Positions 1,659 through 60,055 of a DNA stretch of 64,000 bases are shown one piece after another. The stretch covers positions 186,001-250,000 of the IMG/VR virus record IMGVR_UViG_3300038424_000251; one strand, given 5' to 3'. Position numbers and translations under genes: made by a program. The first letter of the stretch is position 1, and each line of letters starts with the position of its first letter. The notes under the pieces were generated by a model. It made no database searches. It was not told the DNA's origin and saw only the letters and a program-made list of their open reading frames with translations.

Positions 1659-2270
1659 GTGACCCAAATAAAACCTGAAATCTACGGGAAAAACGCAAAA
1701 CCGCTGGGTCAGTACCCAGCGGTTGTTTTGGTTAATCCCAAGTATTCTGCTAACGTTGGTGCGGTACTTAGAGCAGCTTCGTGCTTCGGAGCAAAACAAC
1801 TTTGGTGGACAGGAAACCGTGTTAGGTTGGATGATGGGCAACGTCTCCCCCGTGAAGAACGGTTGAAAGGTTATAAGGATGTTGAACTTCGCCAGTTTGA
1901 TTATCCATTTGAACATTTTAAGGGTGAAGGAGTTACGCCAATTGCGATTGAACTATTGCCGGGGTCTGAATGTCTATGTGACTTTATTCATCCTCCTAAA
2001 GCGATTTATGTCTTTGGGCCAGAAGATGGCTCAATAGACCAAGTAACTCGAAGATTTTGTCATAGATTTGTAAGCATACCAACAAAACATTGCACAAATC
2101 TGGCAGCAGCAGTTTATTTAGTTCTCTATGACAGAATGTTTAAACACTGGATGCAAACAGGCGAAAAACCTGAACTTAATGAACAACGTGGATTCATTGG
2201 CGATGATGAACAATCAAACCAAGACGTTTGGAGAGAAGCTGGTTATAGAAATGGAGTAGCATTTATATGA
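1659..2270 (+). CDS. SpoU/TrmH-family (SPOUT) RNA 2'-O-methyltransferase
   Basis: Motifs VVLVNPKYSANVGAVLRAASCFG, YVFGPEDGSI, SIPTKHCTNLAAAVYLVLYDR match SPOUT motifs 1-3. Confidence 0.85.
   Translation: MTQIKPEIYGKNAKPLGQYPAVVLVNPKYSANVGAVLRAASCFGAKQLWWTGNRVRLDDGQRLPREERLKGYKDVELRQFDYPFEHFKGEGVTPIAIELLPGSECLCDFIHPPKAIYVFGPEDGSIDQVTRRFCHRFVSIPTKHCTNLAAAVYLVLYDRMFKHWMQTGEKPELNEQRGFIGDDEQSNQDVWREAGYRNGVAFI
1701..1722 (+). repeat. AGT-loop GC hairpin, member of dispersed family (inside SPOUT CDS)
   Basis: ccgctgggt-cagt-acccagcgg, perfect 9-bp inverted repeat; shares AGTACCC..AGCG with copies at 40524 and 59969. Confidence 0.55.
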
Positions 2271-2971
2271 AATTATGGAATATAGGTTATCTTATTGTTT
2301 TCCTATTACTAATGATAACAGGTCATTGGTTTATAGGTATTGTAGCAGCATTGATTTGGTATATGGGATATAAAATCAAACGTTTCTTTTTTTCTATTGA
2401 TTAATTCACGAATATGGAAAATATAAAAATCATATCATTATACTGTATCGTCATTTTAATTGTTTCAATAACAGCTATATGGTTTTTGAATGGCGTGCAA
2501 GATTTTTTTGAATATCAATCCATTCTTGAAGACAACAATACTTCGTGGAATAGTTGGTATAGCCAAAATTGGTTCTATTCTCCTTACACTAATTTTAGAC
2601 TGTCTCAATATCCATCAACATTTCATATAGCAAAACTAACGGTGATAATAGCCAGATATGGATTGAAAAAGAGAAAAAGGTTGGTAACAAAACATTTTGG
2701 ACTATAGACTATAAAATGGATTTAATAAAACATGAATAATACAAAATACATTTGTAACGCAGCAAAAAATGGATATTGTATTTTTCAAATTTTATTTGCT
2801 GGTCCCAATTCCCGCACATTCTGTTCTGATGCTGTTCCTCATTTAAAAGGAGAAACCAACGATTGTTGCTGTAATAATTTATTAAATCATAATTGTGGAT
2901 GGGCAGCTAAAAGCACAAAAACCAATCCTAAGAAACTTTTTCCATCAGCTAGATGTACAAAAATTAAATAA
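2267..2971 (+). other. cluster of three small hypothetical ORFs (2267..2404 membrane peptide, 2414..2707, 2732..2971 Cys-rich)
   Basis: Tightly packed co-oriented ORFs between SPOUT and ligase genes; 2267..2404 read by eye, below the track cutoff. Confidence 0.55.
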
Positions 2972-2973
2972 TT

Positions 2974-3627
2974 GTGATAGAATATCCAACCATCTTACCA
3001 TCAGCAAGAGCACCGCACGCTCCGTGTGTTGCTTTTGAGAAATATGACGGTTCTAATATCAGAGTAAAATATACTAATAAAAAAGGGTTCTGTCTTTTCG
3101 GTAGTCGCACCCAATTATTCGATAAAGGCCATCCATTTTTAGGAGAAGCTGTAGATATTTTTTACAACAAATATCAAGACAAGTTGATTGACCTTATTGA
3201 AGAAATGTGGCCTCATGAACGTGAAGTAATTGCTTTCCTTGAATTCTTTGGGGATAATTCATTTGCTGGTTATCACGAAAAAGATGACCCGAAAGATTTG
3301 ATACTCTTTGATTTAATGATTGGTCATAAAAACCGAAAATTTCTATTACCTCAAGAATTTGTCAGACTTACAGCCAAAGTCAAAGTTGAAATTCCAACGA
3401 TAATGTATGAAGGCAATTTAAGCGACCAACTTATTTACGATATTCGTGACGGTAAATATGATACATTTAGTAAACGTAAAATATTTGAGGGCGTCGTTTG
3501 TAAAGGAACAGAACGAACCGGTGCTCATCGCGGTAATATTTGGATGGCAAAAATCAAAACACGGAAGTATTTAGATTTACTTAAAGGTAAATTTGGTGAA
3601 GAAGAAGCAAAAAAGTATGGTGAATAA
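2974..3627 (+). CDS. RNA ligase-type nucleotidyltransferase (short, adenylation domain only)
   Basis: Motif I AFEKYDGSN, LILFDL, FEGVVCK, MAKIKT. Confidence 0.75.
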   Translation: MIEYPTILPSARAPHAPCVAFEKYDGSNIRVKYTNKKGFCLFGSRTQLFDKGHPFLGEAVDIFYNKYQDKLIDLIEEMWPHEREVIAFLEFFGDNSFAGYHEKDDPKDLILFDLMIGHKNRKFLLPQEFVRLTAKVKVEIPTIMYEGNLSDQLIYDIRDGKYDTFSKRKIFEGVVCKGTERTGAHRGNIWMAKIKTRKYLDLLKGKFGEEEAKKYGE

Positions 3628-4525
3628 CATGCGAAAAATGCTTAAAGATTTTTTGGATAATTCTTCTCCTGAACAATTAAGAGAAGAACTTAAAAAAGGA
3701 AACCGACCATTTTTTCAAACATTAAAAGACCCCACAATAATTCATATGAAAAATATAAAAGTCAATGTAACATTGGAATTTGAATTTCCATTTAATGAAA
3801 ATGATGAAGTTTATAAAACAGTCTTTGAGAATTTAGTTAACTATGCTCTTTGCGAACATCTTGAAGATGCAAGTTATTGGTTAGCAAAGAGTAAAGGGAA
3901 TAAAAAATCTACCGATTATGAGATTTATGTTCACCATAAACTATGGGCAGATGTATTGACAAAATCAGAACTAAATGTGAACTACGAAGTAATATTCCCC
4001 AAAGAACCAACTAAATCCTACTGGGTAAAAGACGATGGAATACACTGCCCTATCTGTGGTGTTGAAATGGATGGTTGTCATATTGGCTCATTTTGTAGTA
4101 AAGAGAAGGGCGGTTGTGGAAAATGGTGTGATGGACGTGCAGACCTAACAGATGCAGAAGCAGAAAAATTTAAAGAAATAATAATAAGATGAATTCGCTT
4201 ATAACAGAAAAATTTAGAAAGTTAAAATTTCCTCAAAAAAGATTTTATGCTGAAAGACTTTTTTGTTTGGATTACTATGAACGATTAAAATACATTCAGT
4301 ATATGTTGACTATCTTTAAAGAAATTAAAAATTACTATGAAAATTAAACCTGACAAAAATGTTGAAGCTCCTCCAACTGAAATTATAACAGAAGGATACT
4401 ACAAACTTTTATGTGCTATCATTGGACATAAATTCCAATGGAAAACTACACCTAAAAAACATTACCAACAGCAAATATGTGAAGTATGTGGAATGACGGG
4501 TGAAACAAGAAAAAACAGAGCATGA
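3593..4525 (+). other. two hypothetical ORFs (3593..4192 with C-terminal Cys cluster CPICG...CGKWCDG; 4337..4525)
   Basis: ORF track; Cys/His-rich putative zinc ribbons. Confidence 0.55.
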
Positions 4526-5539: not shown

Positions 5540-5627
5540 AATTAATCATATATACATAGATATTTCGGAAAACGCCTTATTTTATAAGGCTTGACAGTAT
5601 ATAGAAAAAGTGATATAGTGCCCTATA

Positions 5628-15966: not shown

Positions 15967-16601
15967 GAATTGCTATTTTAAGTTGGGGTTCGTTAATACA
16001 AACGGGTGTCCAAAGAGGTTTGTTAATTGACGGGGATTGGCATATAGGTGGCCCAATACTTCCCCTTGAATTTTCCCGTATCAGTCAGTCAGGCGAAAGA
16101 GCCGGTTGTCTAACACTTGTCATTGATGAGCAAAACGGTGTAAATGTTCCAACACACTACGCCCTTAGTTCTTATACTAATCTAAACAATGCTATTTTTA
16201 ATCTTAGAACAGTAGAAAGAATTACACTAATATATAGCATAGGATATGTTAATATTACCAATAATACCGAACGTGAGTTTGCACGAAGAAAGCATCCAAT
16301 TGCTTGCAATACTATTAAAGCATGGGCACAAACTAATTGTTTTGATGCAGTTATTTGGACGGGTCTTCTATCAAATTTTGAAGAAAAGACAGGCATACCA
16401 TTTAGTGTAGAAACTGCTGTTCAATATCTTAGTCACTTGAGAGAACCAATAACATCCCGAGCGTTTGAATATATTCGTAATACACCTGCAGAAGTTATAA
16501 CTCCACTTCGCAGAGTTGTAGATGATTCTCTTTCTGTTACCCCTACTCCCATAAGGGATGAAGTACCACCCCCCTTTTCTTTTCATTTTAGGCCATTATA
16601 A
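15963..16601 (+). CDS. gamma-glutamylcyclotransferase-fold-like hypothetical protein
   Basis: N-terminal IAILSWGSLI and LPLEFSRIS resemble the GGCT-like YGSL loop; weak. Confidence 0.4.
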   Translation: MRIAILSWGSLIQTGVQRGLLIDGDWHIGGPILPLEFSRISQSGERAGCLTLVIDEQNGVNVPTHYALSSYTNLNNAIFNLRTVERITLIYSIGYVNITNNTEREFARRKHPIACNTIKAWAQTNCFDAVIWTGLLSNFEEKTGIPFSVETAVQYLSHLREPITSRAFEYIRNTPAEVITPLRRVVDDSLSVTPTPIRDEVPPPFSFHFRPL

Positions 16602-33639: not shown

Positions 33640-36162
33640 ATGAAAACAAGTGAATGGAAAATTGTCATTATTGTATCAATTGTATTTATGGTGGGGTTTT
33701 ATGTAGGATATGAAATTTGTAAAAACAATATGAGATATGATGCCATAAATGCTGGCGTTGCTCACTTTGTCACTATTAATAAAGACAATCCTTATAATGA
33801 ATTTCCTCATAGCGAATTTCAGTGGATTACAAACACTGTTATAAGGAAGTAACGTATGAAGGAAAGCCTTATTACATATTATTAATAATAATATGGCACA
33901 AAAAATAGTTACAAGCACAAGCCCAAGAATCTTTGAAGAAAAAGTTAATCAACTTCTTGAAGATGGATGGAAAGTAGTTCCCGGTTCAATGATTAATTCT
34001 GTTTCTTCTCATTATGATAAAACGTGGAGTAGAAGCGAAGTTAATTATCTTTGTTCGGTTGTATTGGAAAAATCAACTTAAGATTTATGGGAGAATTAAC
34101 CATAGAAGATTACAGAAAACGCCTTGAACAAGCGTATGATATGTGGGATAGTGGTCTTGAAATCCACGATGGAACTAATGGTGATTTAATACCTATCAAA
34201 GATTGGATAGAACAAGTTGAAGGTGTTGGCTTTATTGATTACGATGGCCATGGCGTATTTTCTTTCAAACGGGCTGATGGAGTATGGATAAAAGGTAGAT
34301 TGCATATTCACCCTTCTGACATTACAAAATTTAAAATAACACCGCCTGCGTGGGCAACTCATGTGTTATGGTTTAATAGATAAAATTATGTTAGAATTTG
34401 TTAAAAAATTTTTCAGAAGAAACTTAACTCCTATTGATTATTCAAAAGTTATTGAAGTCGGCGATACTATTGGTTTCACGTATGCTAGTTATTATCACGA
34501 AGGCATAGTTGAAACTATTTTGAATTTAAATGAAAGTAATGATGATGTAAAATATGTCATAAAAATTACACGAGATGATTCTCCTAGATATTTTTCTAAC
34601 TGGATAGGTAGGACTGAAATAATTGATTTAAGTTATACTTATTGGACAATTATTAAAAAATATAATGTTACAGAAATACCAGTTGATGTTTCTTTTAAAA
34701 ATAAATAATATGAACGGTAGTTATTACAAAGAATGGTTAAAAGAACAAAATCCTGAAAATCCAGTGTGTGAAATGTACTCTGGCTTCATTATAATGTTAT
34801 TCTTATTTTGTGGTGGTATTGCTCTTACTTTGTCAGCACATTTATTATGGTGTATAGTTGTAGTGTTATTTTCAATATTAGGAATGTATCATTGGGGAAA
34901 ATTGATAATATAATGGTGGTTTTATAATCATAACATTAAAATACAGAAAGAACTTGAACAAGAACGAAAAGAAGCCGAACAAGAACGGTACAAATATGCT
35001 ATAATTCAACTTAAAGAAATAAAAAAGTTGATAGACGAATTTCTTAAAAAAGGTGAAGAAATACAGCATAGAAATATGAAACAAGTTTCACCCGGTCTTT
35101 GGATTAACAAAGATTCCACGATGGAAGAAGTTCTTAAATGGTTAAATGATATGATTCCCAAAGAAAAGTAAAATATGATGAAAGGCCAACTAGTATATGA
35201 TAAAGAGGGAAAGTTGATTTCCCACAGACGTTGGTTTAAGGTAATATTTAATCCAATTTTGAGAAAATTTGGTTGGCAGATTGTGACTCAAATTGATAAG
35301 AAAGAAAATTTTATCGGGTATATATTAAAGAAATACGAAAATTCCAAAAATCATGAACATAATAATTTTTAGCAAAAAATGCTGTCAGTGGTTTAAGGGC
35401 TGGCGTCAAAAACACAAAAAATTGTATTTTAACTTGATTGTTGCTCTTGTGGTGTTTGGAGGTATGCTTCCTTCCTGCCTTGTATTTTCCGTGTTTGGGA
35501 TGGTTGTGCATCATGTAACTTGGCAAATAAACTTTGCTTTACTAATTGGAGGTTACATACTATTTGTTTTTGGTTCTCTATTAGGTGCTCTTGTGGGATA
35601 TGTAAGCCTTCTTGCGGAAAAATATTATTTTTTAGAAAACTCCGATTCTATTGACAAGATTAAATCTTAACAATTTATCATATACCCTATAGGGATAGTG
35701 GTAGTAGGACTCCCACTAGCGCTTGACTTTTTATAGAAGTATGATAAACTACTATATTGGTTATGAAATTGAAAAACCTAATAGTTTATCCTATTCTTGG
35801 AATAGCCTGTTTGTTGGCTTTATTATCCGTTCCATCTATCTTAATGGTCGGCATTGCTTTTGCCATTGACGGTCAAGAAAATGAAACACTTGGTCAATAT
35901 CTTGAAAGGAAAGAAATTTAAATTTATGAAATGTAAATCTCCACTGACACCGTTGTTCATAGTTTTAACAACTGGCTTTACCGGCATTTTTGCGTTCATA
36001 TCCACTTTAACTTTATGGACACAAAGATTTCCAAAACTTGGAGCAGTGATTAGTATAATCATTGCTATTATTTTTGTCCTACATTGGTATTGCTTTTGTC
36101 GTTTTCATGACGAGTTGAGAAAAGAAGCCGGATGGAAGATTGAACCACCCACTAAAATATGA
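33640..36162 (+). other. run of small hypothetical and membrane ORFs (33640..33852, 33893..34081, 34051..34383, 34361..34708, 34665..34913, 35175..35372, 35353..35670, 35854..36162)
   Basis: ORF track; some starts uncertain. Confidence 0.55.
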
Positions 36163-39500: not shown

Positions 39501-39508
39501 AAACAGAT

Positions 39509-40449: not shown

Positions 40450-41000
40450 CCCTATATCCACAGAGGGAGTAGTACCACCCTCACTTGTATAAATATTTAC
40501 ATATCACTCTCTAGCCCTATTGAGGGGTGAGTACCCCCAGCGCTGTTCTCGTCGAAAGCGTTATGTGACTGGTGGATTAAATGAGGCTGAATATCTACAA
40601 TGATTGTTTGTAGAAATAGGATAGTTTAAAGAGCTAGATAGTGTGTGCGTTTTCTTAAAATATTGTAAAAATCAGGCTCTTAAATTTAAGTAATTGTGTG
40701 AATGAATGTCGGTTGGTTACAGCTCTAAGAGCCAGAATTTCCCCATGCTGGTTAGATCATGATTATACTATTATACAGGGCTTTCTAGGTACTTTTTAAA
40801 ATTGTACTTAATATTAATTATAAGTACTTTTAATAATTTAACTAGGTACAGAAGTACTTCTAAGTACTATCATGATCGCCCAAAAAATTATTTTATTTTG
40901 CGTTGTGCGCTTTTAAATTTTATATTCAGAAAGCGCTTAATTCTAAAAAAATTAGGATTTAGCTCTTAAAAATATTTTTTCAGAGAACAGCGCTTTTTAG
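40450..41000. other. long non-coding locus with nested inverted repeats and six GTAC motifs; candidate replication origin or other DNA control site
   Basis: agcgctgttctc 40539-50 / gagaacagcgct 40983-94; gatcatgat 40755-63 / atcatgatc 40869-77; GTAC at 40789, 40804, 40824, 40846, 40854, 40864 in very AT-rich DNA. Confidence 0.45.
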
Positions 41001-41249
41001 GATTCTATAAATAATAGAAAAGGATGGGTTTGGCGAAGTTTATCGTTAACGCTGCGCAAAACGCAGCCAGTTTCATCTTTAACGATAATAATAAGAAATG
41101 ATTTTGAAATGTTTGTATAAACGCCACGGCGCATGGTATTGTGAGATATGGATGCCAATATGGCGAAGAAATTTGAAGAATTGTAGTATCTACCTTCCGG
41201 AGCCCGTAGGTCGCCTCACATAGATATGTTATCAAATGTTTATAGAAAG

Positions 41250-41702: not shown

Positions 41703-41900
41703 ACCAATAAATAGAGCGCAATTAATGTTTACGCTCAAATTGATAACATTGTGGTATGCGCCATAAATTACTATACAATTCAGGAATTAGGGGATCTTCG
41801 GTGTGATTTTATTATATCATAGTTTTTATATTTGTCAAGCCTTCAACTGTGTTTTCATGTCAGCGCTTGACTTTTTATAAAGTTTTGATATATTGAACTT

Positions 41901-43628: not shown

Positions 43629-43885
43629 TTCAAGACCGGTCATAGCCAAGCCCTAGGGGAAACCTTGGGGCTTGACTTTTATAAAAATTTTGGTAAATTA
43701 AAAATATGATTATACTACCATTAGGATTAGCCCTCGGTGTATTTTGTGGAAACTTTGTCATTTACGGAATTTTACAACATAATGTAAAGAAAGGTTTGTT
43801 CATTGGTGGATTAGCCGGTATTCTATCATTTATTCTGTTGTCTCTTTTTAATTGGCTTTTTTAACTATTTAGTATAACAAACAAT

Positions 43886-44300: not shown

Positions 44301-44381
44301 CACGTGCGTTTATAATAATTATCGATAAAGGAATCATCGCAGGCTCCGGTCCCCTACTCTCTGGAGGTTTATCTCCACAAC
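44261..44381 (-). ncRNA. candidate ~120-nt small RNA carrying the 42-nt motif (copy 1)
   Basis: Promoter TTGACT 44415-10 / TAGACT 44393-88; motif 44320-44361; terminator stem 44268-44300 then U-tract. Confidence 0.55.
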
Positions 44382-46760: not shown

Positions 46761-46780
46761 GCTGTTGAAATACAATACAA

Positions 46781-46822
46781 AACGGGGCTCGTGTAGTCAA
46801 TGATACGAGCCCTGTTTCCTTT
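46781..46822 (+). terminator. intrinsic terminator
   Basis: aacggggctcgt...acgagccctgtt followed by tcctttt. Confidence 0.65.
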
Positions 46823-46863
46823 TCAGGGCTTGACATTTTTCAAATGTTTGGTAGAATATTACC

Positions 46864-50684: not shown

Positions 50685-50713
50685 CATTTTTTGGTTCTTT
50701 GATACTATTTATT

Positions 50714-51128
50714 CGTTGTCCAGTGGTAAAAGTCGCCGGTGAGCGATGTTCCCATTGGAATTAGCCAAAGCTGGGAGATGACTAGAACGTGACAGTAAAG
50801 CGTTCTTAGCTTAAATAAAAGCGCCGGGAACAAATACCGAAACACCGGAGACAGTTGAAACCCAATTGTTAGGAAAAGAGAGTAAGAAGATTACTCGTGG
50901 CCGCTAAGCGACCCGAAGGTTGAGACTACAACGTATCGGCGTAATGCTGATGGTAATGTGGAAAGAAATGAATGCTCCGAAAGGGGCCGTCTGGAGTCGG
51001 CTAAGTAAGAAACTTGGTCCATGCCGGTCTAAGTTTCTGAGGATGACCAGATGAAATTGTAGAGGCTGTATTGCCGATTGGCTGAAAGCGGCAACTTTCA
51101 TAACCAATCATCCAGCCCATGAATTTTT
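50714..51128 (+). ncRNA. candidate large structured ncRNA (~410 nt), family not recognised
   Basis: Own promoter (TTGACA 50681 / TACTAT 50703); no sense ORF; at least 10 helices; two pseudoknot-type pairings near 3' end; ends in U-tract. Confidence 0.65.
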
Positions 51129-51215
51129 TGTTGGCATATAGGTTCCTGAATAAGGACATTTAGGTTGGCTCAAACCCTTAAAGATTCCTACCTGCTACCG
51201 TGAACCACCAACAAA
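51127..51215 (+). ncRNA. candidate ~90-nt structured RNA
   Basis: Closing stem tttgttgg/ccaacaaa plus ggttc/gaacc; internal hairpins. Confidence 0.35.
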
Positions 51216-51249
51216 GCTTGATAATCTATTAAGTTGTGATAAGATAATT

Positions 51250-51329
51250 TTTTGTTGGTGAAAACAGTAAGCTGCTGCGAGGGTAATGCAAGACGATATT
51301 GTTTCCTCTAAAACTCTCCATCAATAAAA
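51250..51329 (+). ncRNA. candidate ~80-nt structured RNA
   Basis: Preceded by TTGATA-N16-TAAGAT; closing stem ttttgttggtg/catcaataaaa with GU pairs. Confidence 0.3.
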
Positions 51330-51351
51330 GACGTTCTTTGAATAATTTTGT

Positions 51352-51592
51352 GTTCCGTGACTGAGTAACTGCTACCGTTAGCAGTAAAGTAACATGAAGG
51401 TGAAGAATCTTTATGGATACGAAAGTAGCCGGAGTAAGTAAGGTAAAGGATGACTAAGTAGGCCAACTGAAAAATCCTTTGTAATCACGCTAATAAGCCA
51501 TAACGGCGTGGTTTAGGAATCGACGGGTTCCAACTGACTGAATAACTGAAAGGTAAGAATAGTCGAAGGTAACAAGCGAATCCTTCCGGAAC
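51352..51592 (+). ncRNA. candidate ~240-nt structured ncRNA immediately 5' of tRNA-Met
   Basis: Closing stem gttccg/cggaac; helices actgcta/tagcagt, aaaggat/atccttt, atcacgct/ggcgtggt, gaagg/ccttc; no ORF. Confidence 0.5.
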
Positions 51593-51602
51593 GCATTTGA
51601 AT

Positions 51603-51679
51603 AGCGGGGTGGAGCAGCTCGGTAGCTCGTCACGCTCATAACGTGAAGGTCGCTGGTTCAAATCCAGCCCCCGCAACCA
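51603..51679 (+). tRNA. tRNA-Met(CAT), initiator-like body with atypical anticodon stem
   Basis: agcgggg/ccccgca with 1:72 mismatch, tggagcagctcggtagctcg D-arm as in tRNA-fMet, anticodon stem tcacg-ctcataa-cgtga, CCA encoded. Confidence 0.9.
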
Positions 51680-51684
51680 ATTTT

Positions 51685-51750
51685 GTCGGTGATAGGTAGA
51701 AGCAGCAGTCGGTGTTAGTTATTTGCGCTCCCTATCACCGGCGCCCTTTT
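51685..51750 (+). terminator. 12-bp stem hairpin after tRNA-Met (terminator or small RNA)
   Basis: gtcggtgatagg 51685-96 / cctatcaccggc 51731-42, 34-nt inner region, then ccctttt. Confidence 0.45.
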
Positions 51751-51751
51751 T

Positions 51752-52177: not shown

Positions 52178-53100
52178 TTAGGCTGGTGGGTTGTAAGATT
52201 CAAGTTGAATTGCTCCTGAACTGGAGATGCGATTGCGTAGGAATTTCTTGAATTGATAACTATACTTACCGTTATCTTCTTCAGTCCGCTCCAATCCAAC
52301 CAGATATTTTTCATTCAATGAAATAACTTGAACAATACGGAACTTGTCCCAATCTCCACGGTGAGGATAACGAAATGATACAATTACAATTGGTTTTTTT
52401 GTTGCATCGGGTTTGGTAGTGATTACTGCTCTTGAAACTGATTGCTTCGTATGGCGTCTGCGGAAGAAAATATAATTAGTATAATGGCGGACTGGTTTTC
52501 CAATGGAGTTATGAGTCTTCGCGATTATTGAAGGATTGATTATGTTTTGATAAATGTCACCTTCACGAATTATTTCATCCGATTTAAGTTTTCGATAGTT
52601 ATCTGGAATTTTCATATTTTTGTTATTTTACCGAAATTTTTACAAAAGTCAAGCCTTTATATGGTAGAGGGTAGTACTACCACCCCTTAGTCTCCCCAAG
52701 TCTTGAGATTAAGAGCCTTCTGTTTTGCTTCCAAATCTTTGTAAAGAATGCGTTTACGATTTTCACCCTTGGCAAAACGGCGCTGGACTTTCTTGATAAT
52801 CTGATTGGCGACTTCGGGAATATTGACGCCTCCAATGAATGGCGCAACGGCAACTAAAATTTCACAACCCGATACGTGAATTAATTCCGAAGGCCCGGTA
52901 AAATCATTATCACGCGTTTTTATAACATTTGGAGTGTCCGCAATAGCATCCATTAACTCACAGACTTTTGGAGATGCTTTTTCCCGAAGAATTCCACTTC
53001 GGTAAACACTGTTGCCGGAAAGAACACGGTCAAAAACCAGTTTAACATAGTGAGCGCTGCCACCACCCTGAATTTCATAACGGTATGTGTAATTCATCAT
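52178..53100 (-). other. two hypothetical ORFs, each with own promoter (52178..52615, 52687..53100)
   Basis: ORF track. Confidence 0.65.
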
Positions 53101-53169
53101 AAATTTATTTTAACAAAATTTTTATAAATGTCAAGCCTTATACGGTGGGGAGTAGTACTCCCCGAGCAC

Positions 53170-54039
53170 TTACGAAAAGTAGCCAGTCTTGACACTTACA
53201 GTTTTGGACCCCATTCGAATAATTTTCTGTTTACCATAACCGCCCATGCCTATATCTATAAGTTTTTTCCACGCTTTGGCAAAGAAACTGCCTTCCGGCT
53301 GTGTTCCGTGAAGTAACAGTGCGAAGTTGCCACCGTTACCGTAAGCGTGGCTATCGTCATGGTCTATTGGTAAACGAAGTTTTTTTGCTTCTTCTAATGA
53401 AGAAACGACTACCGAATAGCGAAGCTTATATTTTTTGATTAAATCATCATGCGTGCCACCATAAGAAGCTGTTAATTTGAAATTTTTCGGTATGGTTTTG
53501 AGTCGTTTAATCCAAAATGGCAACGCCTTTGTGTAAGCGTAGAATAAACGATTTGGATGGCGTCTTGCAATTTCCATCCATGCATCAAAATAAGTTTGAT
53601 TGAAAAAATCTCCCGCAACGTGTGCGCGGGTTGGTCTGCCCCATTTTGCCGGTGGTAACGATGCTTCTATTAATCTAACCACTGCGGACTTACTTTTTCG
53701 GCACGCAGCCAAAAGTAAAAAGAAGTTATGCCACCGTGCAAGTCTGACGTTAGGCCGCAACACTTCATCGATGGCGGTGAAACAACGGTATTTCGTTTCC
53801 GGACCGTCTTGAATAATGTATTTGCGTCTGTCGCCAACATCGTGACGTTTTCGGGGATTATGAATGGCGCAACTCCGGCAATCTTTTGCAAAGGGACAAC
53901 TATGACCTGCCGGAAGTGAAAGAGTGATAACGTCATCCAGTTTTAGATTGCGTTCGCCGAATTTCAGTGTATCTTTGTCTGCATTGAAACCGTTGCGGTT
54001 TAATACTGACTCCATAAATGATTTCATTGATTCAATCAT
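53170..54039 (-). CDS. GP88-family phage protein (radical-SAM-like fold)
   Basis: TLSLPAGHSCPFA, YRCF, RAHVAGDFFNQTYFDAWMEIAR, FYAYTK, SYGG; probable ATG at 54039. Confidence 0.8.
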   Translation of the reverse strand: MIESMKSFMESVLNRNGFNADKDTLKFGERNLKLDDVITLSLPAGHSCPFAKDCRSCAIHNPRKRHDVGDRRKYIIQDGPETKYRCFTAIDEVLRPNVRLARWHNFFLLLAACRKSKSAVVRLIEASLPPAKWGRPTRAHVAGDFFNQTYFDAWMEIARRHPNRLFYAYTKALPFWIKRLKTIPKNFKLTASYGGTHDDLIKKYKLRYSVVVSSLEEAKKLRLPIDHDDSHAYGNGGNFALLLHGTQPEGSFFAKAWKKLIDIGMGGYGKQKIIRMGSKTVSVKTGYFS

Positions 54040-54073
54040 TGTGGATGATAACTTAACAGAATTTTTATAGAAG

Positions 54074-54334
54074 TCAAGCGCTGGAAAGTTGACTATTGAG
54101 TTTTGCAACCAAAGTTCGCTTACGTTTGAATTCTACAAGAATTTGTGACCGAGTGACTTGATAATCTTCCAGTTCACATTTTATTCTCCAGTTAAGTAGA
54201 AATTCCTTTGAAGTAACATACATGCCATTAAATTTAGTCCAGATGCCATAATCTCCATCCTTCAATTCACCGTCATAAATTGAGGAAGTTACATTATCAT
54301 TTTCATCAAAATGATAAATAATTTTACCTGACAT
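54074..54334 (-). CDS. hypothetical protein
   Basis: ORF track; stop overlaps -35 box. Confidence 0.6.
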   Translation of the reverse strand: MSGKIIYHFDENDNVTSSIYDGELKDGDYGIWTKFNGMYVTSKEFLLNWRIKCELEDYQVTRSQILVEFKRKRTLVAKLNSQLSSA

Positions 54335-54371
54335 GCGGATAATTTATCAAAGAAATTGGATTTGTCAAGCG

Positions 54372-54453
54372 TTGATAATTTTATAACGATAAAGTAATTT
54401 AAAGATCCTCCGGTCCCCCACTCTCCGGCGTTTTTCAGCCACATCTTTACTAT
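54372..54453 (-). ncRNA. ORF-less promoter cassette carrying the 42-nt motif (copy 2)
   Basis: Promoter gcttgacatttcttaaaacaatggtaatat (54460-54489); motif 54384-54425. Confidence 0.5.
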
Positions 54454-54483
54454 GGGGAAATATTACCATTGTTTTAAGAAATG

Positions 54484-54690
54484 TCAAGCGTTGCTTCTTG
54501 ACTTTGGTGGAGTGCGGTGCTGGATAATCTGATATGCTTGTTTGCAACGCCACGCAAGAGCTGGGTAATTTATATCTTTGCCCCTATTGCAACGAAAATT
54601 ATCAGCAAGACAAACAAACATTTGTTCCAGTTGGTCTGGTTTAAGTTTGAAAATTTTGCTTAAGAATTCGGAAAATTCTTTTTCATCCAT
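54484..54690 (-). CDS. hypothetical protein
   Basis: ORF track; stop overlaps -35 box. Confidence 0.55.
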   Translation of the reverse strand: MDEKEFSEFLSKIFKLKPDQLEQMFVCLADNFRCNRGKDINYPALAWRCKQAYQIIQHRTPPKSRSNA

Positions 54691-55081
54691 ATACAGTTTT
54701 TATATTATCAGAAGGTTTTAGTTTGGCAAGCACTTCACGAACGGTGGATAATGGTTTAATAATCTTCGGTTTACCACGGGGAGATAAGGAAAATCCCTGA
54801 CTTCGTTTTAAGATTTCAGCACGAGATAAAGAAAGGGTTTCTCTTACAGACCTGTTATGATTACACTCAAAACATGCCAACACTTTGCGTTTTTGACTTC
54901 TCTTTTTTTTCTTTACCCATCGATGGACATTATAACGGGAAACCACATGGTCAATTGTTGCCATGAGTGGGTCAGGCTGCCCCTTTATTGTAGGTTCACA
55001 TATAAGTTTTGTGACTCTTCTGCACCAATGACAACGGGGGTCTTTTTTGTGTAATTCCTCTTTGAGTGTTCGATTACTCAC
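54683..55081 (-). CDS. HNH endonuclease (McrA-type, zinc-binding)
   Basis: CHWC...ATIDHVVSR...VLACFECNHNRS. Confidence 0.8.
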   Translation of the reverse strand: MSNRTLKEELHKKDPRCHWCRRVTKLICEPTIKGQPDPLMATIDHVVSRYNVHRWVKKKKRSQKRKVLACFECNHNRSVRETLSLSRAEILKRSQGFSLSPRGKPKIIKPLSTVREVLAKLKPSDNIKTVYG

Positions 55082-56608
55082 TGATTTTGGAAATCGGTTA
55101 ATTCTTTAACCAAAGTTGATGGGTCAATCCGTTCGATGAAAATTGCTTTTCTTCCTTTATGAGCAACAATACTGAAATTATGAATTCTAACTCTGCGGAG
55201 AAATGATATAGTATCATCAATTGAGCAATAACGAGTGTAAACTTCTGCTGATTTATTCAGAACCAAAATTTCCAATCTGTTCATGATAATAATTATATCG
55301 GATGTTTAGATTTTGTCAAGCTTTATTGGATAAAACCTTCTCTTAATGCTTTGTAGAAGAAACTGGAAACTTGATAAGGTTTGGGTGCTTTACAAGTGTT
55401 GATTAAATTAAGACGAAATTTAACCCATATTCTTTTCAGTATTTTTGGATTTAATTTAATCATACTGTGGTATCTTTCTTTTTGAAAAGAATTTCCATTT
55501 TTTCGTCCCAATCTATTGACCGTTGAGCAACAGGACGGGGAAGGCAAAGGTGCCCTCTTTCGTCTTGATATATTCCGTTGAAGTGATAACCGTCAAGAAT
55601 GGGAACATGAACAACGTGAACAATGTTTTTTAGAACTTTTGTGACGATACAATTTGCGTAACCATCTGCAACTTGGAATTTGATATGGCGTCCGGGGTTT
55701 AGACCGGGACGGTTTGCCATATCTAAAGTTGCCAGTCGATTTTCCAGTAATGTCAATTCTTCACGCCATTTAATTCCATCACCATAAGAAAGTTTACCGT
55801 GAGTTTCAGCATCGGCCACAATTTGTTTAATGGCTTTATCAATTGTTTGTTTTAAACTCATAACGGTAATTTACTAAAATTTTGTAGAAAGTCAAGCGTT
55901 CTCAAAGGTAAAACCGAATTCAGACATCATTCCCGTAATCATGTAGATTTTCACATCGCGGGGAAGTTTTGTGTCTCGAAGAGCCTGAATTGCGTATTTT
56001 TCACCTTCTCGTAATTGATTTGTTCGGTCAACTACTTGCCAAGGGCGAAGGTCACGGCGAAGATTATTGAGAATGTTGGAAACTTTTCGCCACAAAATCT
56101 TATCATCCTTGACTCTAAGGATTAAAAGTTTGTAATGACGAATAGAGCCAAAAGATTCCAAGTTGGTCATACAACTCTATTTTAGTGTTCAAAAGTAATA
56201 CCATCAATTATGGTAGCCACAAGAATTACAACAACTAACGGCCCAACCCATAATGGAAATGTAATACAAAGAAATACAAATCCAACTAATTTTAGAATGT
56301 TCATGGTATTCTTATACCACACTTTTTATAGAAGTCAAGCCTTAGTCCCGGCCCCAAGGAATATCATCGGTTCCAAAAGTATCAGGATTTCGTTTTTTTC
56401 CACCAACTTTGAGGCTGGTTACTTGAACATTGATAGAATTAGGTGAAGTCTCATTTTTATCACCAACGATAGTCAGACCATCAAATCTCTCAGCTATGGT
56501 TTCCATTCCTTGATTGATCAATCCTTTAATTGAATTTTCGTCCAGAAATCCGCTTTTTTCATCGGAATGAACTATAACTTTTAGAGTGACTTCAAAGGTG
56601 TTTATCAT
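55078..56608 (-). other. run of small hypothetical cassettes (55078..55284, 55460..55861, 55892..56170, 56342..56608)
   Basis: ORF track; each with own minus-strand promoter. Confidence 0.6.
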
Positions 56609-56648
56609 GGCGGTAATTTATCAAAGATTTTATAGAAGTCAAGCCTTT

Positions 56649-56795
56649 CTACGAACCACCTTCAAAATTAGGATACTGTCGGGGGTCATCATCAACAAAA
56701 GGTTGAAGTTTCAATTTGTTTGATTTACGAGACTTTTGCTGTTTGGCTTTGCGCCAACGTTCATTCTTACTGTCATGTCTGTAACTTTTACCCAT
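56649..56795 (-). CDS. 48-aa basic peptide MGKSYRHDSKNERWRKAKQQKSRKSNKLKLQPFVDDDPRQYPNFEGGS
   Basis: Read by eye (below track cutoff); ATG 8 nt after structured RNA element. Confidence 0.55.
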   Translation of the reverse strand: MGKSYRHDSKNERWRKAKQQKSRKSNKLKLQPFVDDDPRQYPNFEGGS

Positions 56796-56802
56796 AAATT
56801 GG

Positions 56803-56909
56803 TGGCCAGTCTGGGTCTTCTCCAGTTACCAACGCCTCTTGGTCAATCGTAGTCAAATCCAAGCACTCCCTACGATTTAGTCAGCATCCGCCTTTTACGG
56901 CTCTGGCCA
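56803..56909 (-). ncRNA. candidate five-way-junction structured RNA (107 nt)
   Basis: P1 tggccag/ctggcca; gcc/ggc; aatcgtag/ctacgatt; accaa/ttggt; ctgg/ccag. Confidence 0.55.
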
Positions 56910-56997
56910 TTAAATTGACGGGGTTCCTACTACACGAAGCTTATGGGCCTTCGCCGCCACTCAAACTTTATACTGTTCGGTTACCCCGTTTAAAATC

Positions 56998-57297
56998 TTA
57001 TGACCTGCTTGGCCGCTTTGTTTTAGCAGCTCTTACCACTTCGGACTTTGATGTCCGCCTTGGTGACGTTTCTTTTTCAGTCACCGTTGCTACTGGTGCT
57101 TGAGCAGGTTGCTTTTCCTTCAATTGTATAAGCCGAGCAAGTTCTCGTTGACTTCCACCACGGTTGGTAACAAGAGTAATTTTGTCTGCTCGTGATAGTC
57201 TGTTATATTTGAGTTGCCGAGTTTCGGCTTCTTCCCGTTTCCGAGCCTTGCGAACATCGGCCTTTTTGTGTGAGTAACCTTTTTCTTTTCTTGCCAT
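56998..57297 (-). CDS. highly basic hypothetical protein
   Basis: ORF track, K/R-rich; own promoter. Confidence 0.65.
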   Translation of the reverse strand: MARKEKGYSHKKADVRKARKREEAETRQLKYNRLSRADKITLVTNRGGSQRELARLIQLKEKQPAQAPVATVTEKETSPRRTSKSEVVRAAKTKRPSRS

Positions 57298-57337
57298 AAT
57301 GATGATATTTTATATCTTTTTATAGAATTGTCAAGCG

Positions 57338-57991
57338 TTAGTTGGTTCTATATGAAAATCTGAAAAATTCAATAGGGGGATAACCGGGTCCAATAGGTGC
57401 GTTTACACTTGCAAGTGGAGTATTATTATGATTACTTGCATAAATAGACCATAATGGATTACCAAGATTGGTTGAAGCCCACAATGTCCACGATGTTGCA
57501 TTTGTTGGTATCCACGGTAATGAAATAGTTAAATTAGTTATTGGATAATTTGTCCATGTATATCCTACTGGTATGTAAAATATATTAGTTCTATGTAAAA
57601 CAGGACTATAATTAGTTTGCCAGTAGCCTACTAAATTTGTTGTTATATTAACTCGAAGATTTGGTGTAGATAACAATTGAAAATCTGTTGAATAATGTAT
57701 TGTTGGTGAAAATGAACCTTCAAGTTTATTTATATCATAAGAACTGATTACAAAATAATAAACTGTTTTTGGTAATAAATTAGAAATTGTTTGGTTTGTT
57801 ATACTTGCGTTACTATTAGTGATAACACTTGTATAAATTCCTAAAATAGTACCGTAATAAACTTTATAACCAGCTACAGCTGGATTTACACTTTTGTTCC
57901 ATCCTACGGTAAGAGTAGCACTTTCAGTGGTTGAAGTTAGAACTATTACTAATGATAGAAGAGTTCCTAAAAATTTTGATAAATGTTTCAT
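57338..57991 (-). CDS. secreted fibronectin type III domain protein
   Basis: Signal peptide; TLTVGWNKS...VAGYKVYYG...TISNLLPKTVYYFVISSYD; C-terminal W.L.ASTNL...W...FFR. Confidence 0.8.
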   Translation of the reverse strand: MKHLSKFLGTLLSLVIVLTSTTESATLTVGWNKSVNPAVAGYKVYYGTILGIYTSVITNSNASITNQTISNLLPKTVYYFVISSYDINKLEGSFSPTIHYSTDFQLLSTPNLRVNITTNLVGYWQTNYSPVLHRTNIFYIPVGYTWTNYPITNLTISLPWIPTNATSWTLWASTNLGNPLWSIYASNHNNTPLASVNAPIGPGYPPIEFFRFSYRTN

Positions 57992-58025
57992 GTTGAATGA
58001 TATTTTACACGTTTTTATAAAATTG

Positions 58026-58910
58026 TCAAATGTTTTGAATCACTTCAAATGAAGTTTTTGGAACATCCAATAAAACAGAATCGTTTTCCAGCCAAATGTC
58101 AACGAAACTTCGTCCCTGAGTTTCTTCTATGGAATAAACGTCAATGGTATCATTCGGGTAAAAGGTTTTTTCACCCGGCATATCGTTACCTTCATCATAG
58201 TCAACCGTGGTCAACTTTAAAAATTTCACTTTTTTCATATCATCCATAACTATAGAAGGATATGAAAAAAAGTCAAGCGCTTATTGATGACTTAATTAGG
58301 CTGAAGTTCGTTGAATGGCAACCCTTTAGCTTGTTCCTTGAAATAATCTGGGTTATCTGTAATATTCACGAAAAGTTTCGGGTCAATATTTGATGCGGTT
58401 GCTAACCGTTCACCCGTTTTAGGGTCAATAAGAATTAGCACTTTTGGATTCAATGGTAACGGTGTCATATTTTATATCTTACTGTGGAATTAGAAAAAGT
58501 CAAGCCTTTTGACGAAGAATAAGAATTATGACTACAATACCAAATCCAGCTAAAACAACGGTATAAGGTTCCATATTTTATGTATCACCGTATGTTAATG
58601 ATTCATCATTGCGTTCACGAAGGAATTCTCGATAAGCAGGTAATTTGTTAAGTTCTTCTAATACTTCTACAGAATCAGGAAGTCGTTCCTCTTCTATGTC
58701 AATTTCTTCTGAATCTGATTTCATTATTTATTCCAATAAATTAACTTGGTCAGGGTCACAATCAAAACAATCTCCCTTTTGGTCCTCAACTGTGATTAAA
58801 AGGCCATCGTGACGGATTATTTTCACCGTTCCCAAAAACTCATGCCAATCATCTTCGGCTTTTGGAGTAACCATAACTGCTTCACCAACTTCAAAACGAT
58901 TTTTAATCAT
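58026..58910 (-). other. small hypothetical cassettes (58026..58247, a 58-aa ORF MTPLPLNPK..., a 48-aa acidic ORF MKSDSEE..., 58728..58910)
   Basis: ORF track plus two short ORFs read by eye. Confidence 0.55.
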
Positions 58911-58990
58911 GGCGTTACGTTATCACGATTCTATAAAATGTCAAGCGTTTGGATGCTTGACATTTAAAAAATCTATGGTAAATTGATATT

Positions 58991-59819
58991 GTGAATGTAG
59001 AATTAATGGAACATGAGTTGAATTTACTCAATGGTAAAACCATTGTTATTGTTCGGGATGGATTTGGAACGCAAAGTGATTCATGGGTTGGTCAGTTAAC
59101 GGTATTGCCTGAAAAATATCCTCTTGGTTTTCATTTTCAAAGTACAGATTTTGCAATATATTTCACCGCAGATGATGTTCTTAAACTTGATGACTCAATT
59201 GACAAAATAACTGCAAAAATTATTCGTCTAAAAGGACCAAACGATTATGCCCAAGTCTATCAAATCTCACATTGACCGCCATACCCAAGCTGCATCAGTA
59301 GTAGCTTCTCACAGTTATTTTGTCATTGCTGAGATTTCTAGTAATGAGAACCCCGGTTTACTGGTGGGAACAGAAGTAAGGAAATATAAAGACCCCGAAG
59401 CCGCTCCCAGTCGATTTTGGAATGGATTATATTGGACATCTTTTGTTCTTTGCCCGAATGGTGAAATACGAAAAGTTTGTTGTGATGTTCTGAAACCAAG
59501 GAATACTGATACATACTTTAAACGTCAACAAAAGATTTTTCCTCAAATCGCCGCTTGACATTTTCTAAAAGTTTCGTATATTTAAGCCATTATGAACAAT
59601 ATGGCATTGGAACGAGCCCAGAAATGGTTTACGGAACTTGAAGTCCGAACCGAAGCTCGCCAGAATTGTCTTTTGGTCAATCGTGACGATATCGATAAAC
59701 TATTCGGTATTGGTGTTATTTATGATACTGTTTTGGTGGAACTTAAAACTGGGTTGAATTACAGTCGTTACTATTGGACAAAGAAAGACCGTGAATGGCT
59801 TTATCTTGAAACACTTTAA
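58991..59819 (+). other. three hypothetical ORFs (58991..59275, 59247..59558, 59592..59819)
   Basis: ORF track; promoters at about 58958 and 59555. Confidence 0.6.
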
Positions 59820-60055
59820 TTTTGTGAAAATGGTATTAAAGAAACCTACAAGACCATTCAGAGTAGTATTGAAGTATTGGTTTCCAAGAAGACTTACACT
59901 AGCTTGTAATCCAAGAATTCATGCTTGGCTTTGGTGGAATTTTTAACTCCATTAACCCTATAGTGGGCGGGATAGTACCCCCAGCGGAAAATAAAATTAA
60001 GGACCCCCCGCGCTATTTTTCTGCGTTTTGGTGCCGCAAAAGATATTTATGGGGT

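What the first reader, a model, noticed from the sequence alone, without database searches (positions are those of the whole stretch)
1701..59986. Strand-polar family of GC-rich hairpins with an AGT(AC) loop core
Seen on the + strand: 1701 ccgctgggt-cagt-acccagcgg (inside SPOUT CDS); 16548 cccataagggatgaagtaccaccccc; 35685 ccctatagggatagtggtagtaggactcccactagc (variant, AGG loop); 40450 ccctatatccacagagggagtagtaccaccctc; 40516 ccctattgaggggtgagtacccccagcg; 52654 cctttatatggtagagggtagtactaccacccc; 53136 ccttatacggtggggagtagtactccccgagc; 59956 ccctatagtgggcgggatagtacccccagcgg. Rough consensus CCYTATA-Nx-GGG-N1-4-AGTAC-N0-2-CCC(CAGCG). The asymmetric AGTACC copies all face the same strand. The 52.6k and 53.1k copies keep the same upstream TATA-like flank on + although neighbouring genes run on -. 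None has a U-tract. Inference: a DNA-level signal such as a cruciform or ssDNA hairpin promoter (as for N4 virion RNA polymerase), a primosome/ssi site, a nicking or packaging site, or a protein-binding site, rather than an ordinary terminator.
Basis: partly seen in the sequence, partly recalled or inferred. Interest (0 to 1): 0.6.

Follow-up and report, generated by a model that had tools for sequence, protein, structure and literature searches.

The report
Strand-polar GTAC motif beside phage promoters
A small, conserved GC-rich motif with a GTAC at its centre sits at the ends of early genes, next to host-type promoters, in an uncultivated T4-like giant phage and its relatives, always in the same DNA orientation; it most resembles the stem-loop half of the known PeSL promoter-terminator cassettes, and its exact job is still open.

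Summary
All eight sites exist, one of them a base off. The family is far above chance: 6 GGG..GTAC..CCC sites in the window against 0.29 in simulations. It is conserved, with 22 copies in five related phage contigs from peat and wetland metagenomes. Several copies lie at orthologous positions.

The unit is C-run, (T)ATA(C), G-run, apex GTAC, C-run, AGCG. It lies at or just after a stop codon. Its left end is often fused to a leftward sigma70-like early promoter, and its right end to a rightward one.

Every copy in a contig has the same orientation, the rIIA coding strand in the three large contigs. This holds inside an inverted gene block, so the polarity is real. It rests on about ten independent loci.

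Most copies are not good hairpins. Only w1701 folds better than shuffles, and it is an outlier in the 5' end of the SpoU coding region. Five of the five scanned lack a T-tract, but w1701 and w16548 have T-rich tails.

The closest known thing is the Gn-loop-Cn stem-loop of PeSL cassettes in T4-like phages. My best reading is a PeSL-type 3'-end or attenuator and recombination-linker module. A DNA-level, GTAC-centred protein site is a serious rival. An N4-type hairpin promoter is not supported.

The parts
1701..1722 (+). Perfect 11-bp-stem hairpin with loop CAGT and flanks CCGCT / AGCGG. An outlier of the family: it has no TATA flank and lies in codons 15-22 of the SpoU-methylase ORF (GTG 1659).
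   Evidence: 20 bits, weakest hit; SpoU domain starts at residue 22; z -5.2 / -5.9
16548..16574 (+). Element copy: C-run, ATAA, G-run, apex AAGTAC, C-run, followed by a T-rich run. It overlaps the last 17 codons of ORF 15963-16601, about 50 nt before the radical-SAM gene. Ortholog in G001 at 60247.
35685..35722 (+). Variant copy with apex GTAG: CCCTATAGGG palindrome plus a second stem, ending in AGCGC. It lies 15 nt after the stop of ORF 35353-35670 and is fused to the -35 of a rightward early promoter.
   Evidence: (promoter score 36.9)
35723..35750 (+). Rightward sigma70-like early promoter (TTGACT, 16 nt, TAAACT with TG) abutting the element.
40450..40482 (+). First copy of a tandem pair. 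It overlaps the last 14 codons of a small CxxCxGxG zinc-finger ORF (40319-40492). Ortholog in G001 (38503-38548).
40515..40543 (+). Second copy of the tandem pair, ending GTACCCCCAGCGC. A decayed leftward promoter lies between the two copies. Ortholog in G001 (38446-38491).
52654..52686 (+). Copy inside the minus-strand gene block. Its right end touches the stop of ORF 52687-53100(-). Its left end (CCTTTATAT) is fused to the -35 of a minus-strand promoter. The apex is palindromic, and the bottom-strand RNA gives an 8-bp stem with G-U pairs.
52625..52652 (-). Leftward early promoter (TTGACT, 16 nt, TAAAAT) driving ORF 52178-52615(-).
   Evidence: (32.7)
53136..53167 (+). Copy inside the minus-strand block: a 7-bp stem with an AGT triloop, 6 nt from the stop of the GP88-like gene 53170-54108(-). 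The left end is fused to a minus-strand promoter. Orthologs lie after the same gene in G001 and G002.
53107..53134 (-). Leftward early promoter (TTGACA, 16 nt, TAAAAT, TG) driving ORF 52687-53100(-).
   Evidence: (33.5)
59956..60013 (+). Copy (59956-59987) plus a 'tail' holding a second half-copy (GGACCCCCC GCGC). Orthologs in L008, G001 and G002 keep GTACCCCCAGCG unchanged. In those relatives a rightward promoter follows 66-82 nt from the apex; here an HNH gene follows instead.
60056..60604 (+). HNH endonuclease ORF directly downstream of the 59956 element. It is absent at the orthologous place in G001, where other small ORFs take its place.
40789..40867 (.). Array of six GTAC words in 80 nt of AT-rich non-coding DNA, about 250 nt downstream of the tandem pair. 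It is conserved in G001. A possible link to the GTAC apex is not shown.

Best explanation
The elements are the stem-loop component of PeSL-type regulatory cassettes in the early, hyperplastic region of a T4-like jumbo phage.

Each unit has two short GC-rich stem-loops. SL1 is C-run, TATA-like loop, G-run. SL2 is G-run, GTAC apex, C-run. The unit is placed at or right after a stop codon and before the next sigma70-like early promoter.

When transcribed from either strand it puts a GC clamp at the 3' end of the upstream message. I infer that this attenuates read-through or stabilises the 3' end, which insulates the many small early transcription units. Because it is a conserved repeat next to a conserved promoter, it also serves as a homology patch where gene cassettes are swapped.

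Its constant orientation is most simply inherited. The founder unit carried a leftward promoter on its SL1 side and a rightward promoter on its SL2 side. Copies spread by homologous recombination through those oriented promoters, and that process cannot invert them.

Shown: anatomy, position, conservation, polarity, neighbouring indels. Inferred: attenuation or 3'-end function, recombination role, and the neutral origin of the polarity.
For: - Context: the window holds about 70 copies of one early promoter consensus. In the genome there are 124 [GC]CTTGAC[AT] hits, concentrated at 120-280 kb. All elements lie in this promoter-dense zone.
- Position: each copy is at or within about 30 nt of a stop codon, on whichever strand is transcribed. 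The exceptions are w1701 (60 nt past the upstream stop, inside the next CDS) and w59956 (137 nt past the stop).
- Promoter fusion: a leftward promoter sits 18-22 nt from the apex in 5 scored copies, with a decayed one at G1_38517b and one seen by eye at G3_4629. A rightward promoter abuts w35685. In three orthologs of w59956 a rightward promoter lies 66-82 nt away.
- G-run/C-run stems: 72.5% of stem cells pair, and 5 cells show compensatory change (1 of 500 shuffles reach this). Orthologs after the GP88-like gene keep a stem with different sequences.
- Literature: PeSLs are sigma70-like early promoters plus stem-loops that are 'generally GGGG...CCCC'. They sit between stop codon and next gene in hyperplastic regions. 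One such stem-loop terminated as well as rrnB T1, and the cassettes mark indels (PMC2839356, PMC4122927). Phage phi1 has stems such as GGGAGTA...TACTCCC.
- Indels abut the elements in all three orthologous comparisons with G001. The HNH gene is replaced, three genes (39192-40294) are absent, and an extra 500-nt cassette is present.
Against: - Most copies fold no better than their own shuffles (z +0.1 to -2.1), and most lack a U-tract. They would be weak intrinsic terminators.
- Only 3 of the 8 window copies touch an intact promoter.
- Sequence is more conserved than structure. GTAC plus C-run plus AGCG is invariant in four orthologs although their proteins are only about 60-70% identical, while the 5' arm drifts into mismatches.
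- GTAC is kept at every apex in a genome that otherwise avoids it (O/E 0.40).
- In 15 of 20 copies the bottom strand folds better, whichever strand is transcribed.
These points suggest sequence-specific recognition that a plain attenuator does not need.
- No RNA data exist for this phage.
Confidence: 0.45

Rival explanations
1. The elements are DNA-level, strand-specific recognition sites. A phage or host protein such as a site-specific nickase, a recombination protein or a replication protein reads the conserved word GTAC plus C-run plus AGCG on one strand. The weak hairpin is secondary. Localized nicks of T5, phiKMV-like phages and phage tf are the model.
For: - All copies in each of four contigs lie on one strand. 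This includes an inverted gene block and 4 copies not used to train the model.
- A 12-nt invariant core occurs in four orthologs, with a direct half-repeat 24-27 nt downstream.
- Positions are conserved among relatives.
- GTAC is depleted genome-wide (O/E 0.40) but kept at every apex. It is also massed in two AT-rich arrays, one of them conserved in G001.
- Folding is not better than shuffles.
- Known nick sites are 7-19-nt consensus words found on one strand only, and for the tf group at similar positions in related phages (PMC3517423).
- HNH genes lie next to two element loci.
Against: - The copies are confined to the early promoter-dense region and always sit at gene ends or promoters. This points to transcription.
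- Paralogs vary a good deal in the supposedly recognised half.
- Spacing between the flank and the apex varies from 7 to 14 nt.
- Compensatory stem changes exist.
- No nick, end or joint signal could be obtained, because only assembled contigs are public.
- The HNH genes are absent at the orthologous sites.
Confidence: 0.27
2. The elements are relics without a function of their own. They are the GC-rich spacer of an ancestral back-to-back divergent promoter pair, copied around with the promoters by recombination and slowly decaying.
For: - Both ends merge into promoter consensus: CC on the left equals GG before a leftward CTTGAC, and CG is on the right.
- Decayed promoters flank several copies, at w40515, G1_38517b and G2_176770.
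- Other back-to-back promoters in the window form similar inverted repeats, at 58.9k and 60.8k.
- Folding is weak.
Against: - Orthologous copies persist over protein divergence of 60-70% identity with an invariant 12-nt core. At that divergence neutral intergenic DNA should be unrecognisable.
- GTAC is retained despite genome-wide avoidance.
Confidence: 0.12
3. The elements are ordinary bidirectional Rho-independent terminators.
For: - They sit at gene ends and at a convergent junction (tandem pair at 40.4-40.5k).
- The core is palindromic.
- w1701 and w16548 have T-rich tails.
Against: - None of the five copies scanned is called terminator-like.
- The genome does contain canonical A-tract, hairpin, T-tract terminators of a different look, for example at genome 29667, 48770, 119641 and 278072.
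- Z-scores are near zero.
- The flanks are conserved and polar, which a terminator does not need.
Confidence: 0.1
4. The elements are single-stranded-DNA hairpin promoters (N4 virion RNA polymerase type) or primosome/ssi sites.
For: - w53136 and the L008 copies have 6-7-bp stems with a 3-nt loop.
- The polarity is strand-specific.
Against: - No T7-like RNA polymerase domain was found, though the control genomes did not ring either. No Rpb2 domain was found. No ORF exceeds 1620 aa, and the two largest ORFs have no PHROG match.
- Early genes carry sigma70-type promoters.
- The elements lie behind genes rather than in front of transcription units, and in the inverted block they point against the genes.
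Confidence: 0.03

Closest known systems
PeSL (promoter-early stem-loop) cassettes of T4-like phages RB49/phi1, T4/PST, KVP40/nt-1 (Arbiol et al. 2010, PMC2839356; Comeau et al. 2014, PMC4122927)
   Same: - Repeated intergenic modules in the hyperplastic early region.
- Near-consensus sigma70 promoter plus a stem-loop built from a G-run and a C-run.
- Located between the upstream stop codon and the next gene.
- Neighbouring gene cassettes differ between related genomes.
- The authors themselves wondered whether GGGG...CCCC is a protein target.
   Different: - The stem-loop here is a separate, two-part unit upstream of the -35, or even on the far side of a leftward promoter. It does not overlap the -35/-10 boxes as it mostly does in phi1.
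- It has a fixed apex word GTAC and conserved polar flanks.
- Only a minority of the roughly 70 promoters carry it, and several copies have no intact promoter.
- Orientation is fixed on the DNA, not relative to the gene.
- Folding is weak.
- Terminator activity and mini-circles are untested here.
Localized single-strand nick sites of T5, phiKMV-like phages and Pseudomonas phage tf (PMC3517423)
   Same: A short conserved word is present on one DNA strand only, in a handful of copies. In the tf group it lies at similar positions in related phages.
   Different: - No physical nick is shown here.
- The copies are clustered in about 60 kb of a 365-kb genome.
- They are tied to stop codons and promoters.
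- Paralogs vary more than nick consensus sites do.
Rho-independent (intrinsic) terminators
   Same: GC-rich inverted repeat at gene ends. w1701, and to a degree w16548, look like this.
   Different: Most copies have no U-tract, low stability and conserved non-pairing flanks. The same genome holds canonical terminators of another look.
N4 virion-RNA-polymerase hairpin promoters
   Same: Short stem with a 3-nt loop in a few copies, and strand specificity.
   Different: No candidate polymerase, placement at the 3' ends of genes, and sigma70 promoters that already serve the early genes.

Membership tests
PeSL cassette | Contains a sigma70-like early promoter as part of the repeated unit | tested here: inconclusive
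   Three of the 8 window copies abut an intact promoter (w35685, w52654, w53136). Across the scored copies in all genomes, 6 have an intact promoter abutting (1 rightward, 5 leftward), and G3_4629 has one seen by eye. Three more have one 66-82 nt away, and several others show decayed promoters.
PeSL cassette | Stem-loop built from a G-run and a C-run | tested here: met
   The alignment consensus is GGGGGTAGTACCCCC. 72.5% of stem cells pair and 5 cells are compensatory. Stability is not above shuffles for 7 of 8 copies.
PeSL cassette | Intergenic, between the upstream stop codon and the next gene, in a hyperplastic region of small early ORFs | tested here: met
   All copies lie at 187.7-246 kb, where promoter density peaks.
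PeSL cassette | Marks indels or replacements between related genomes | tested here: met
   Three orthologous loci compared with G001 all have a cassette gain, loss or replacement directly beside the element. No control was made for the general indel rate of the region.
PeSL cassette | Stem-loop terminates or attenuates transcription; mini-circles form by recombination between copies | not testable with these tools
   No RNA runs are available. Only assembled contigs could be laid, and the joints seen were cross-alignments of the promoter repeat.
Intrinsic terminator | Stable hairpin followed at once by a U-tract | tested here: not met
   No terminator-like call at w35685, 40450, 40515, 52654 or 53136. 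Z-scores run from +0.1 to -2.1. w1701 is the exception (z -5.2, T-rich tail), and w16548 has a T-rich tail only.
N4-type hairpin promoter | Giant virion RNA polymerase encoded by the phage | tested here: not met
   No PF00940 hit, though the control genomes did not ring, so this is a weak test. The longest ORF is 1620 aa, and it has no PHROG match.
N4-type hairpin promoter | Hairpin lies upstream of, and co-oriented with, the genes it drives | tested here: not met
   The elements follow stop codons. In the inverted block they are anti-oriented to the genes.
Localized nick site (T5 / phiKMV / tf type) | Consensus word present on one strand only, at conserved positions in relatives | tested here: met
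Localized nick site (T5 / phiKMV / tf type) | Physical single-strand interruption in virion DNA | not testable with these tools
   Only Logan contigs of DNA runs are available.
Chi-like polar recombination signal | Genome-wide over-representation and strand skew of the word | tested here: not met
   Counts on + versus - are AGCGG 95 vs 72, CCAGCG 16 vs 25 and GCTGGGGG 0 vs 2. The copies are confined to one region.

The most novel reading that the evidence does not exclude
GTAC is a reserved word in this phage lineage. It is purged from most of the genome and kept only where a phage protein reads it. The polar GC-rich elements would then be strand-specific protein sites, such as localized nick or recombination/replication sites at early cassette borders. 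They would work together with the conserved six-GTAC array 250 nt from the tandem pair, which looks like an iteron or origin. That would be a new kind of DNA-level punctuation of a T4-like jumbo phage genome.
Probability: 0.2. Interest if true: 0.7.

Novelty: new variant of a known kind. Interest (0 to 1): 0.45.

Why it matters
PeSL cassettes were proposed as the linkers that let T4-like phages shuffle small early genes, but they have only been described in a few cultured phages. Here a distant, uncultivated 365-kb relative from peat carries a recognisable version.

This version differs in three ways. It has a separate two-part stem-loop unit, a fixed GTAC apex, and a DNA-fixed orientation kept across relatives whose proteins are only about 60-70% identical.

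If the unit is only an attenuator and linker, this widens the reach of the PeSL idea. If the conserved word is read by a protein, it would identify the long-suspected 'specific DNA-binding protein' of cassette shuffling, or a new nick/origin system. It would also explain why the genome avoids GTAC.

Tried and rejected
- Rfam at gathering thresholds on the whole window found only four tRNAs.
- megablast of 4 kb against GenBank phages gave no match. tblastn of a neighbouring protein found only distant FtsH-like hits.
- A genome-wide local folding scan and a perfect-hairpin scan were too noisy or too strict. The family is not defined by stability.
- A pattern scan of IMG/VR with the 16-base core gave mostly chance hits in GC-rich contigs. 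The useful ones were L008 and a contig identical to the window. A 17-base scan added nothing new.
- Read laying was given 6,000 letters. All 24 runs are DNA metagenomes kept as contigs. The loose ends and joints at 53137 and elsewhere are the 43.6k promoter locus and other promoter copies cross-aligning at 88% likeness. They are not recombinants and there is no verdict.
- Near-identical contigs (100% over 2.7-22 kb) show no indels, so there is no population-level cassette variation to read.
- Coding peptide idea: three copies are read in one frame as P-I...V-P-P at ORF ends. The other frames of the motif hold TAG stops, which explains the shared frame. The ortholog in G001 reads a different peptide, and w40515 has stops. 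Rejected.
- Chi-like signal rejected: no genome-wide skew.
- A larger conserved RNA around w59956 was not supported. RNAalifold finds only the short G/C stem and no covariation. One longer pairing, seen by eye between the G001 and G002 copies only, was left untested.
- Resemblance to CRISPR repeats or host REP elements was considered from memory only and not tested. The one genome-contig scan was judged too unspecific for a 14-16-base GC-rich word.
- The search for homologous proteins, the big representative search, structure prediction and complex prediction were not needed.

Full report
**Where the window lies.** The window is bases 186,001-250,000 of a single 365,299-bp virus record with 33% G+C. 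It encodes T4-type rIIA and rIIB, two RNA ligases, a helicase, a SpoU methylase and tRNAs. A crude gene map puts nearly all genes on the + strand, with a few inverted blocks. One of these blocks is window 52,178-58,910. The DNA occurs in many peat and wetland metagenomes, and no RNA run holds it.

**Checking the observation.** All eight strings are present, and the 40516 copy starts at 40515. I scanned both strands of the whole genome for GGG within 12 nt, then AGTAC, then CCC within 12 nt. This gave seven hits on + and only the two palindromic duplicates on -. Six of the seven lie in the window, and looser cores give the same picture. The window has six GGG..GTAC..CCC sites, against a mean of 0.29 and a maximum of 2 in 100 second-order Markov simulations. 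The family is therefore real.

Several details need correcting:
- w1701 and w16548 are followed by T-rich runs.
- The apex of w52654 and w53136 is the palindrome AGTACT, so only the flanks orient them.
- w1701 lacks the TATA flank and is the weakest model hit. It occupies codons 15-22 of the SpoU ORF, whose domain begins right after it.
- w1701 is the only copy that folds far better than its shuffles (z -5.2 and -5.9). The other seven have z from +0.1 to -2.1 on either strand.

**Anatomy.** Aligning on the apex shows one unit. It reads: C-run, a TATA-like loop often ending in C, G-run, apex GTAC (often AGTAC), C-run, then AGCG followed by C or G. The first three parts can form a small stem-loop (SL1). 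The G-run, apex and C-run form a second (SL2). In the triloop register 72.5% of stem cells pair and five cells show compensatory change, which 1 of 500 shuffles reach. A tetraloop register is no better than chance.

**Context.** The window holds about 70 copies of one sigma70-like early promoter of roughly 30 nt. Genome-wide the -35 word with its GC prefix occurs 124 times and peaks at 200-260 kb. All elements lie in this zone.

Each copy sits at or just after a stop codon. w16548 and w40450 overlap the last 17 and 14 codons of their ORFs. The second of these is a small CxxCxGxG zinc-finger ORF. The remaining copies, w1701 and w59956 aside, lie 0-27 nt past a stop.

A promoter weight matrix shows how the ends join promoters. 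The left end is fused to a leftward promoter, with the TTGAC 18-22 nt from the apex, in w52654, w53136 and three copies in relatives. A decayed one lies at G1_38517b, and one is visible by eye at G3_4629, which had too little flank to score. The right end is fused to a rightward promoter in w35685. In three orthologs of w59956 a rightward promoter follows 66-82 nt from the apex, after a tail that repeats the 3' half of the unit.

**Relatives.** Four routes found related phage contigs:
- a 16-base pattern scan;
- an rIIA search of IMG/VR;
- an rIIA search of metagenomes;
- a covariance model built from 17 copies.

Together they gave 22 copies in five related genomes whose rIIA is 58-69% identical to the window's. 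Orthology is clear in several cases:
- The copy after the GP88-like gene is shared by the window, G001 and G002, whose proteins are 63-71% identical.
- w59956, w16548 and the tandem pair w40450/w40515 have orthologs in G001, flanked by orthologous genes.

In the four orthologs of w59956 the 12 bases GTACCCCCAGCG are invariant while the 5' arm drifts. In all three comparisons with G001 a gene cassette is gained, lost or replaced right beside the element. An HNH gene in the window is replaced by other ORFs, three genes are absent, and one extra cassette is present.

**Polarity.** In every contig all copies share one orientation: 8 on + in the window's genome, 6 on - in G001, 5 on + in G002 and 2 on - in L008. 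In the three large contigs this strand is the rIIA coding strand. Four of these copies were not used to build the model.

Copies inside gene blocks that run the other way are not flipped. These are the GP88 block in three genomes and one of the two L008 copies. Orientation therefore does not follow transcription.

Because many copies are orthologs, the number of independent loci is about ten, and only two or three of them lie in inverted blocks. The polarity is well supported but not overwhelming.

A neutral account exists. The founder unit had a leftward promoter on its SL1 side and a rightward one on its SL2 side. Spread by homologous recombination through these oriented promoters cannot invert it.

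**Comparison with what is known.** PeSL cassettes of T4-like phages are strong sigma70-like early promoters joined to stem-loops that are 'generally GGGG...CCCC'. They sit between a stop codon and the next gene in hyperplastic regions. One such stem-loop terminated as well as rrnB T1. The cassettes mark indels and form mini-circles, and the authors wondered whether the G/C stem is a protein target.

Intergenic gaps of phage phi1 show such stems, some close in sequence to the window's (GGGAGTA...TACTCCC), but mostly inside the promoter. The present elements fit this kind, with several differences:
- a separate two-part unit outside the promoter;
- a fixed GTAC apex;
- polar conserved flanks;
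- DNA-fixed orientation;
- weak folding.

They are not ordinary intrinsic terminators. None of the five copies scanned is called terminator-like. The genome also has canonical A-tract, hairpin, T-tract terminators elsewhere.

An N4-type hairpin promoter is not supported. No single-subunit or multisubunit RNA polymerase domain was found, and no ORF exceeds 1620 aa. The elements also lie behind genes.

**What keeps a DNA-level reading alive.**
- Sequence is conserved more than structure.
- The bottom strand folds better in 15 of 20 copies, whichever strand is transcribed. This may simply reflect the C-rich top strand.
- GTAC is the second most avoided 4-base palindrome in the genome (observed/expected 0.40; GATC 0.07), yet it is kept at every apex.
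- Six GTAC words are packed into 80 nt of AT-rich non-coding DNA about 250 nt from the tandem pair. This array is conserved in G001. A second array lies at genome 25.6 kb.
- Known localized nick sites in T5, phiKMV-like phages and phage tf are likewise short words on one strand only. In the tf group they lie at similar positions in related phages.

None of this could be tested. Public runs are DNA contigs only, and the joints seen when laying them were cross-alignments of the promoter repeat.

**Verdict.** My probabilities are:
- PeSL-type 3'-end or attenuator and recombination-linker module, with polarity inherited: about 0.45.
- Strand-specific protein site centred on GTAC: about 0.27.
- Decaying relic of a divergent promoter spacer: about 0.12.
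- Ordinary bidirectional terminators: about 0.10.
- N4-type hairpin promoter or ssi site: about 0.03.

I rate it a new variant of a known kind, of moderate interest.

Noticed in passing
window 40789-40867 (inside the 955-nt non-coding gap 40295-41249); also genome 25567-25625, outside the window: Six GTAC words lie within 80 nt of AT-rich DNA, bracketed by ATCATGAT words. The same six-GTAC array is conserved in the relative G001. A second array of four GTAC lies elsewhere in the genome. It looks like an iteron/origin or a methylation-controlled site.
   Followed up: partly
whole genome (G000): Two 4-base palindromes are strongly avoided: GATC (observed/expected 0.07) and GTAC (0.40). This suggests pressure from restriction or other word-specific systems.
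   Followed up: partly
window 44319-44360 (-), 60683-60725 (-), 63664-63732 (+), variant near 54420-54460; L008:735-807: A second conserved intergenic repeat of about 40-70 nt contains GGCTCCGGTCCCCTAC. It lies next to early promoters and is also present in a related phage contig.
   Followed up: no
window 50685-51751: A 1,067-nt stretch without a convincing ORF lies just upstream of tRNA-Met. It is relatively GC-rich and has no Rfam family at gathering score.
   Followed up: no
window 60056-60604 (+) and 41250-41738 (-): Two free-standing HNH endonuclease ORFs each lie next to an element locus. The first is missing at the orthologous place in G001.
   Followed up: partly
window 40319-40492 (+): A small unlisted ORF (57 aa) has two CxxCxGxG zinc-finger motifs. 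Its last 14 codons are the element w40450.
   Followed up: partly
window 58930-58965 and 60800-60835: Back-to-back divergent early promoters have -35 regions that form perfect 8-bp inverted repeats separated by 7-9 nt.
   Followed up: no
window 43647-43674 and 46770-46830: Other, unrelated strong stem-loops have a 3' arm that runs into the GGC prefix of an early promoter (-18 and -25 kcal/mol). The phage therefore has several classes of promoter-proximal stem-loops.
   Followed up: no
genome 269,506-269,545 (outside the window): An isolated 3' half of the element (GTACCCCC followed by GACCCCCGC and a TATATAG word) has no upstream G-run.
   Followed up: no
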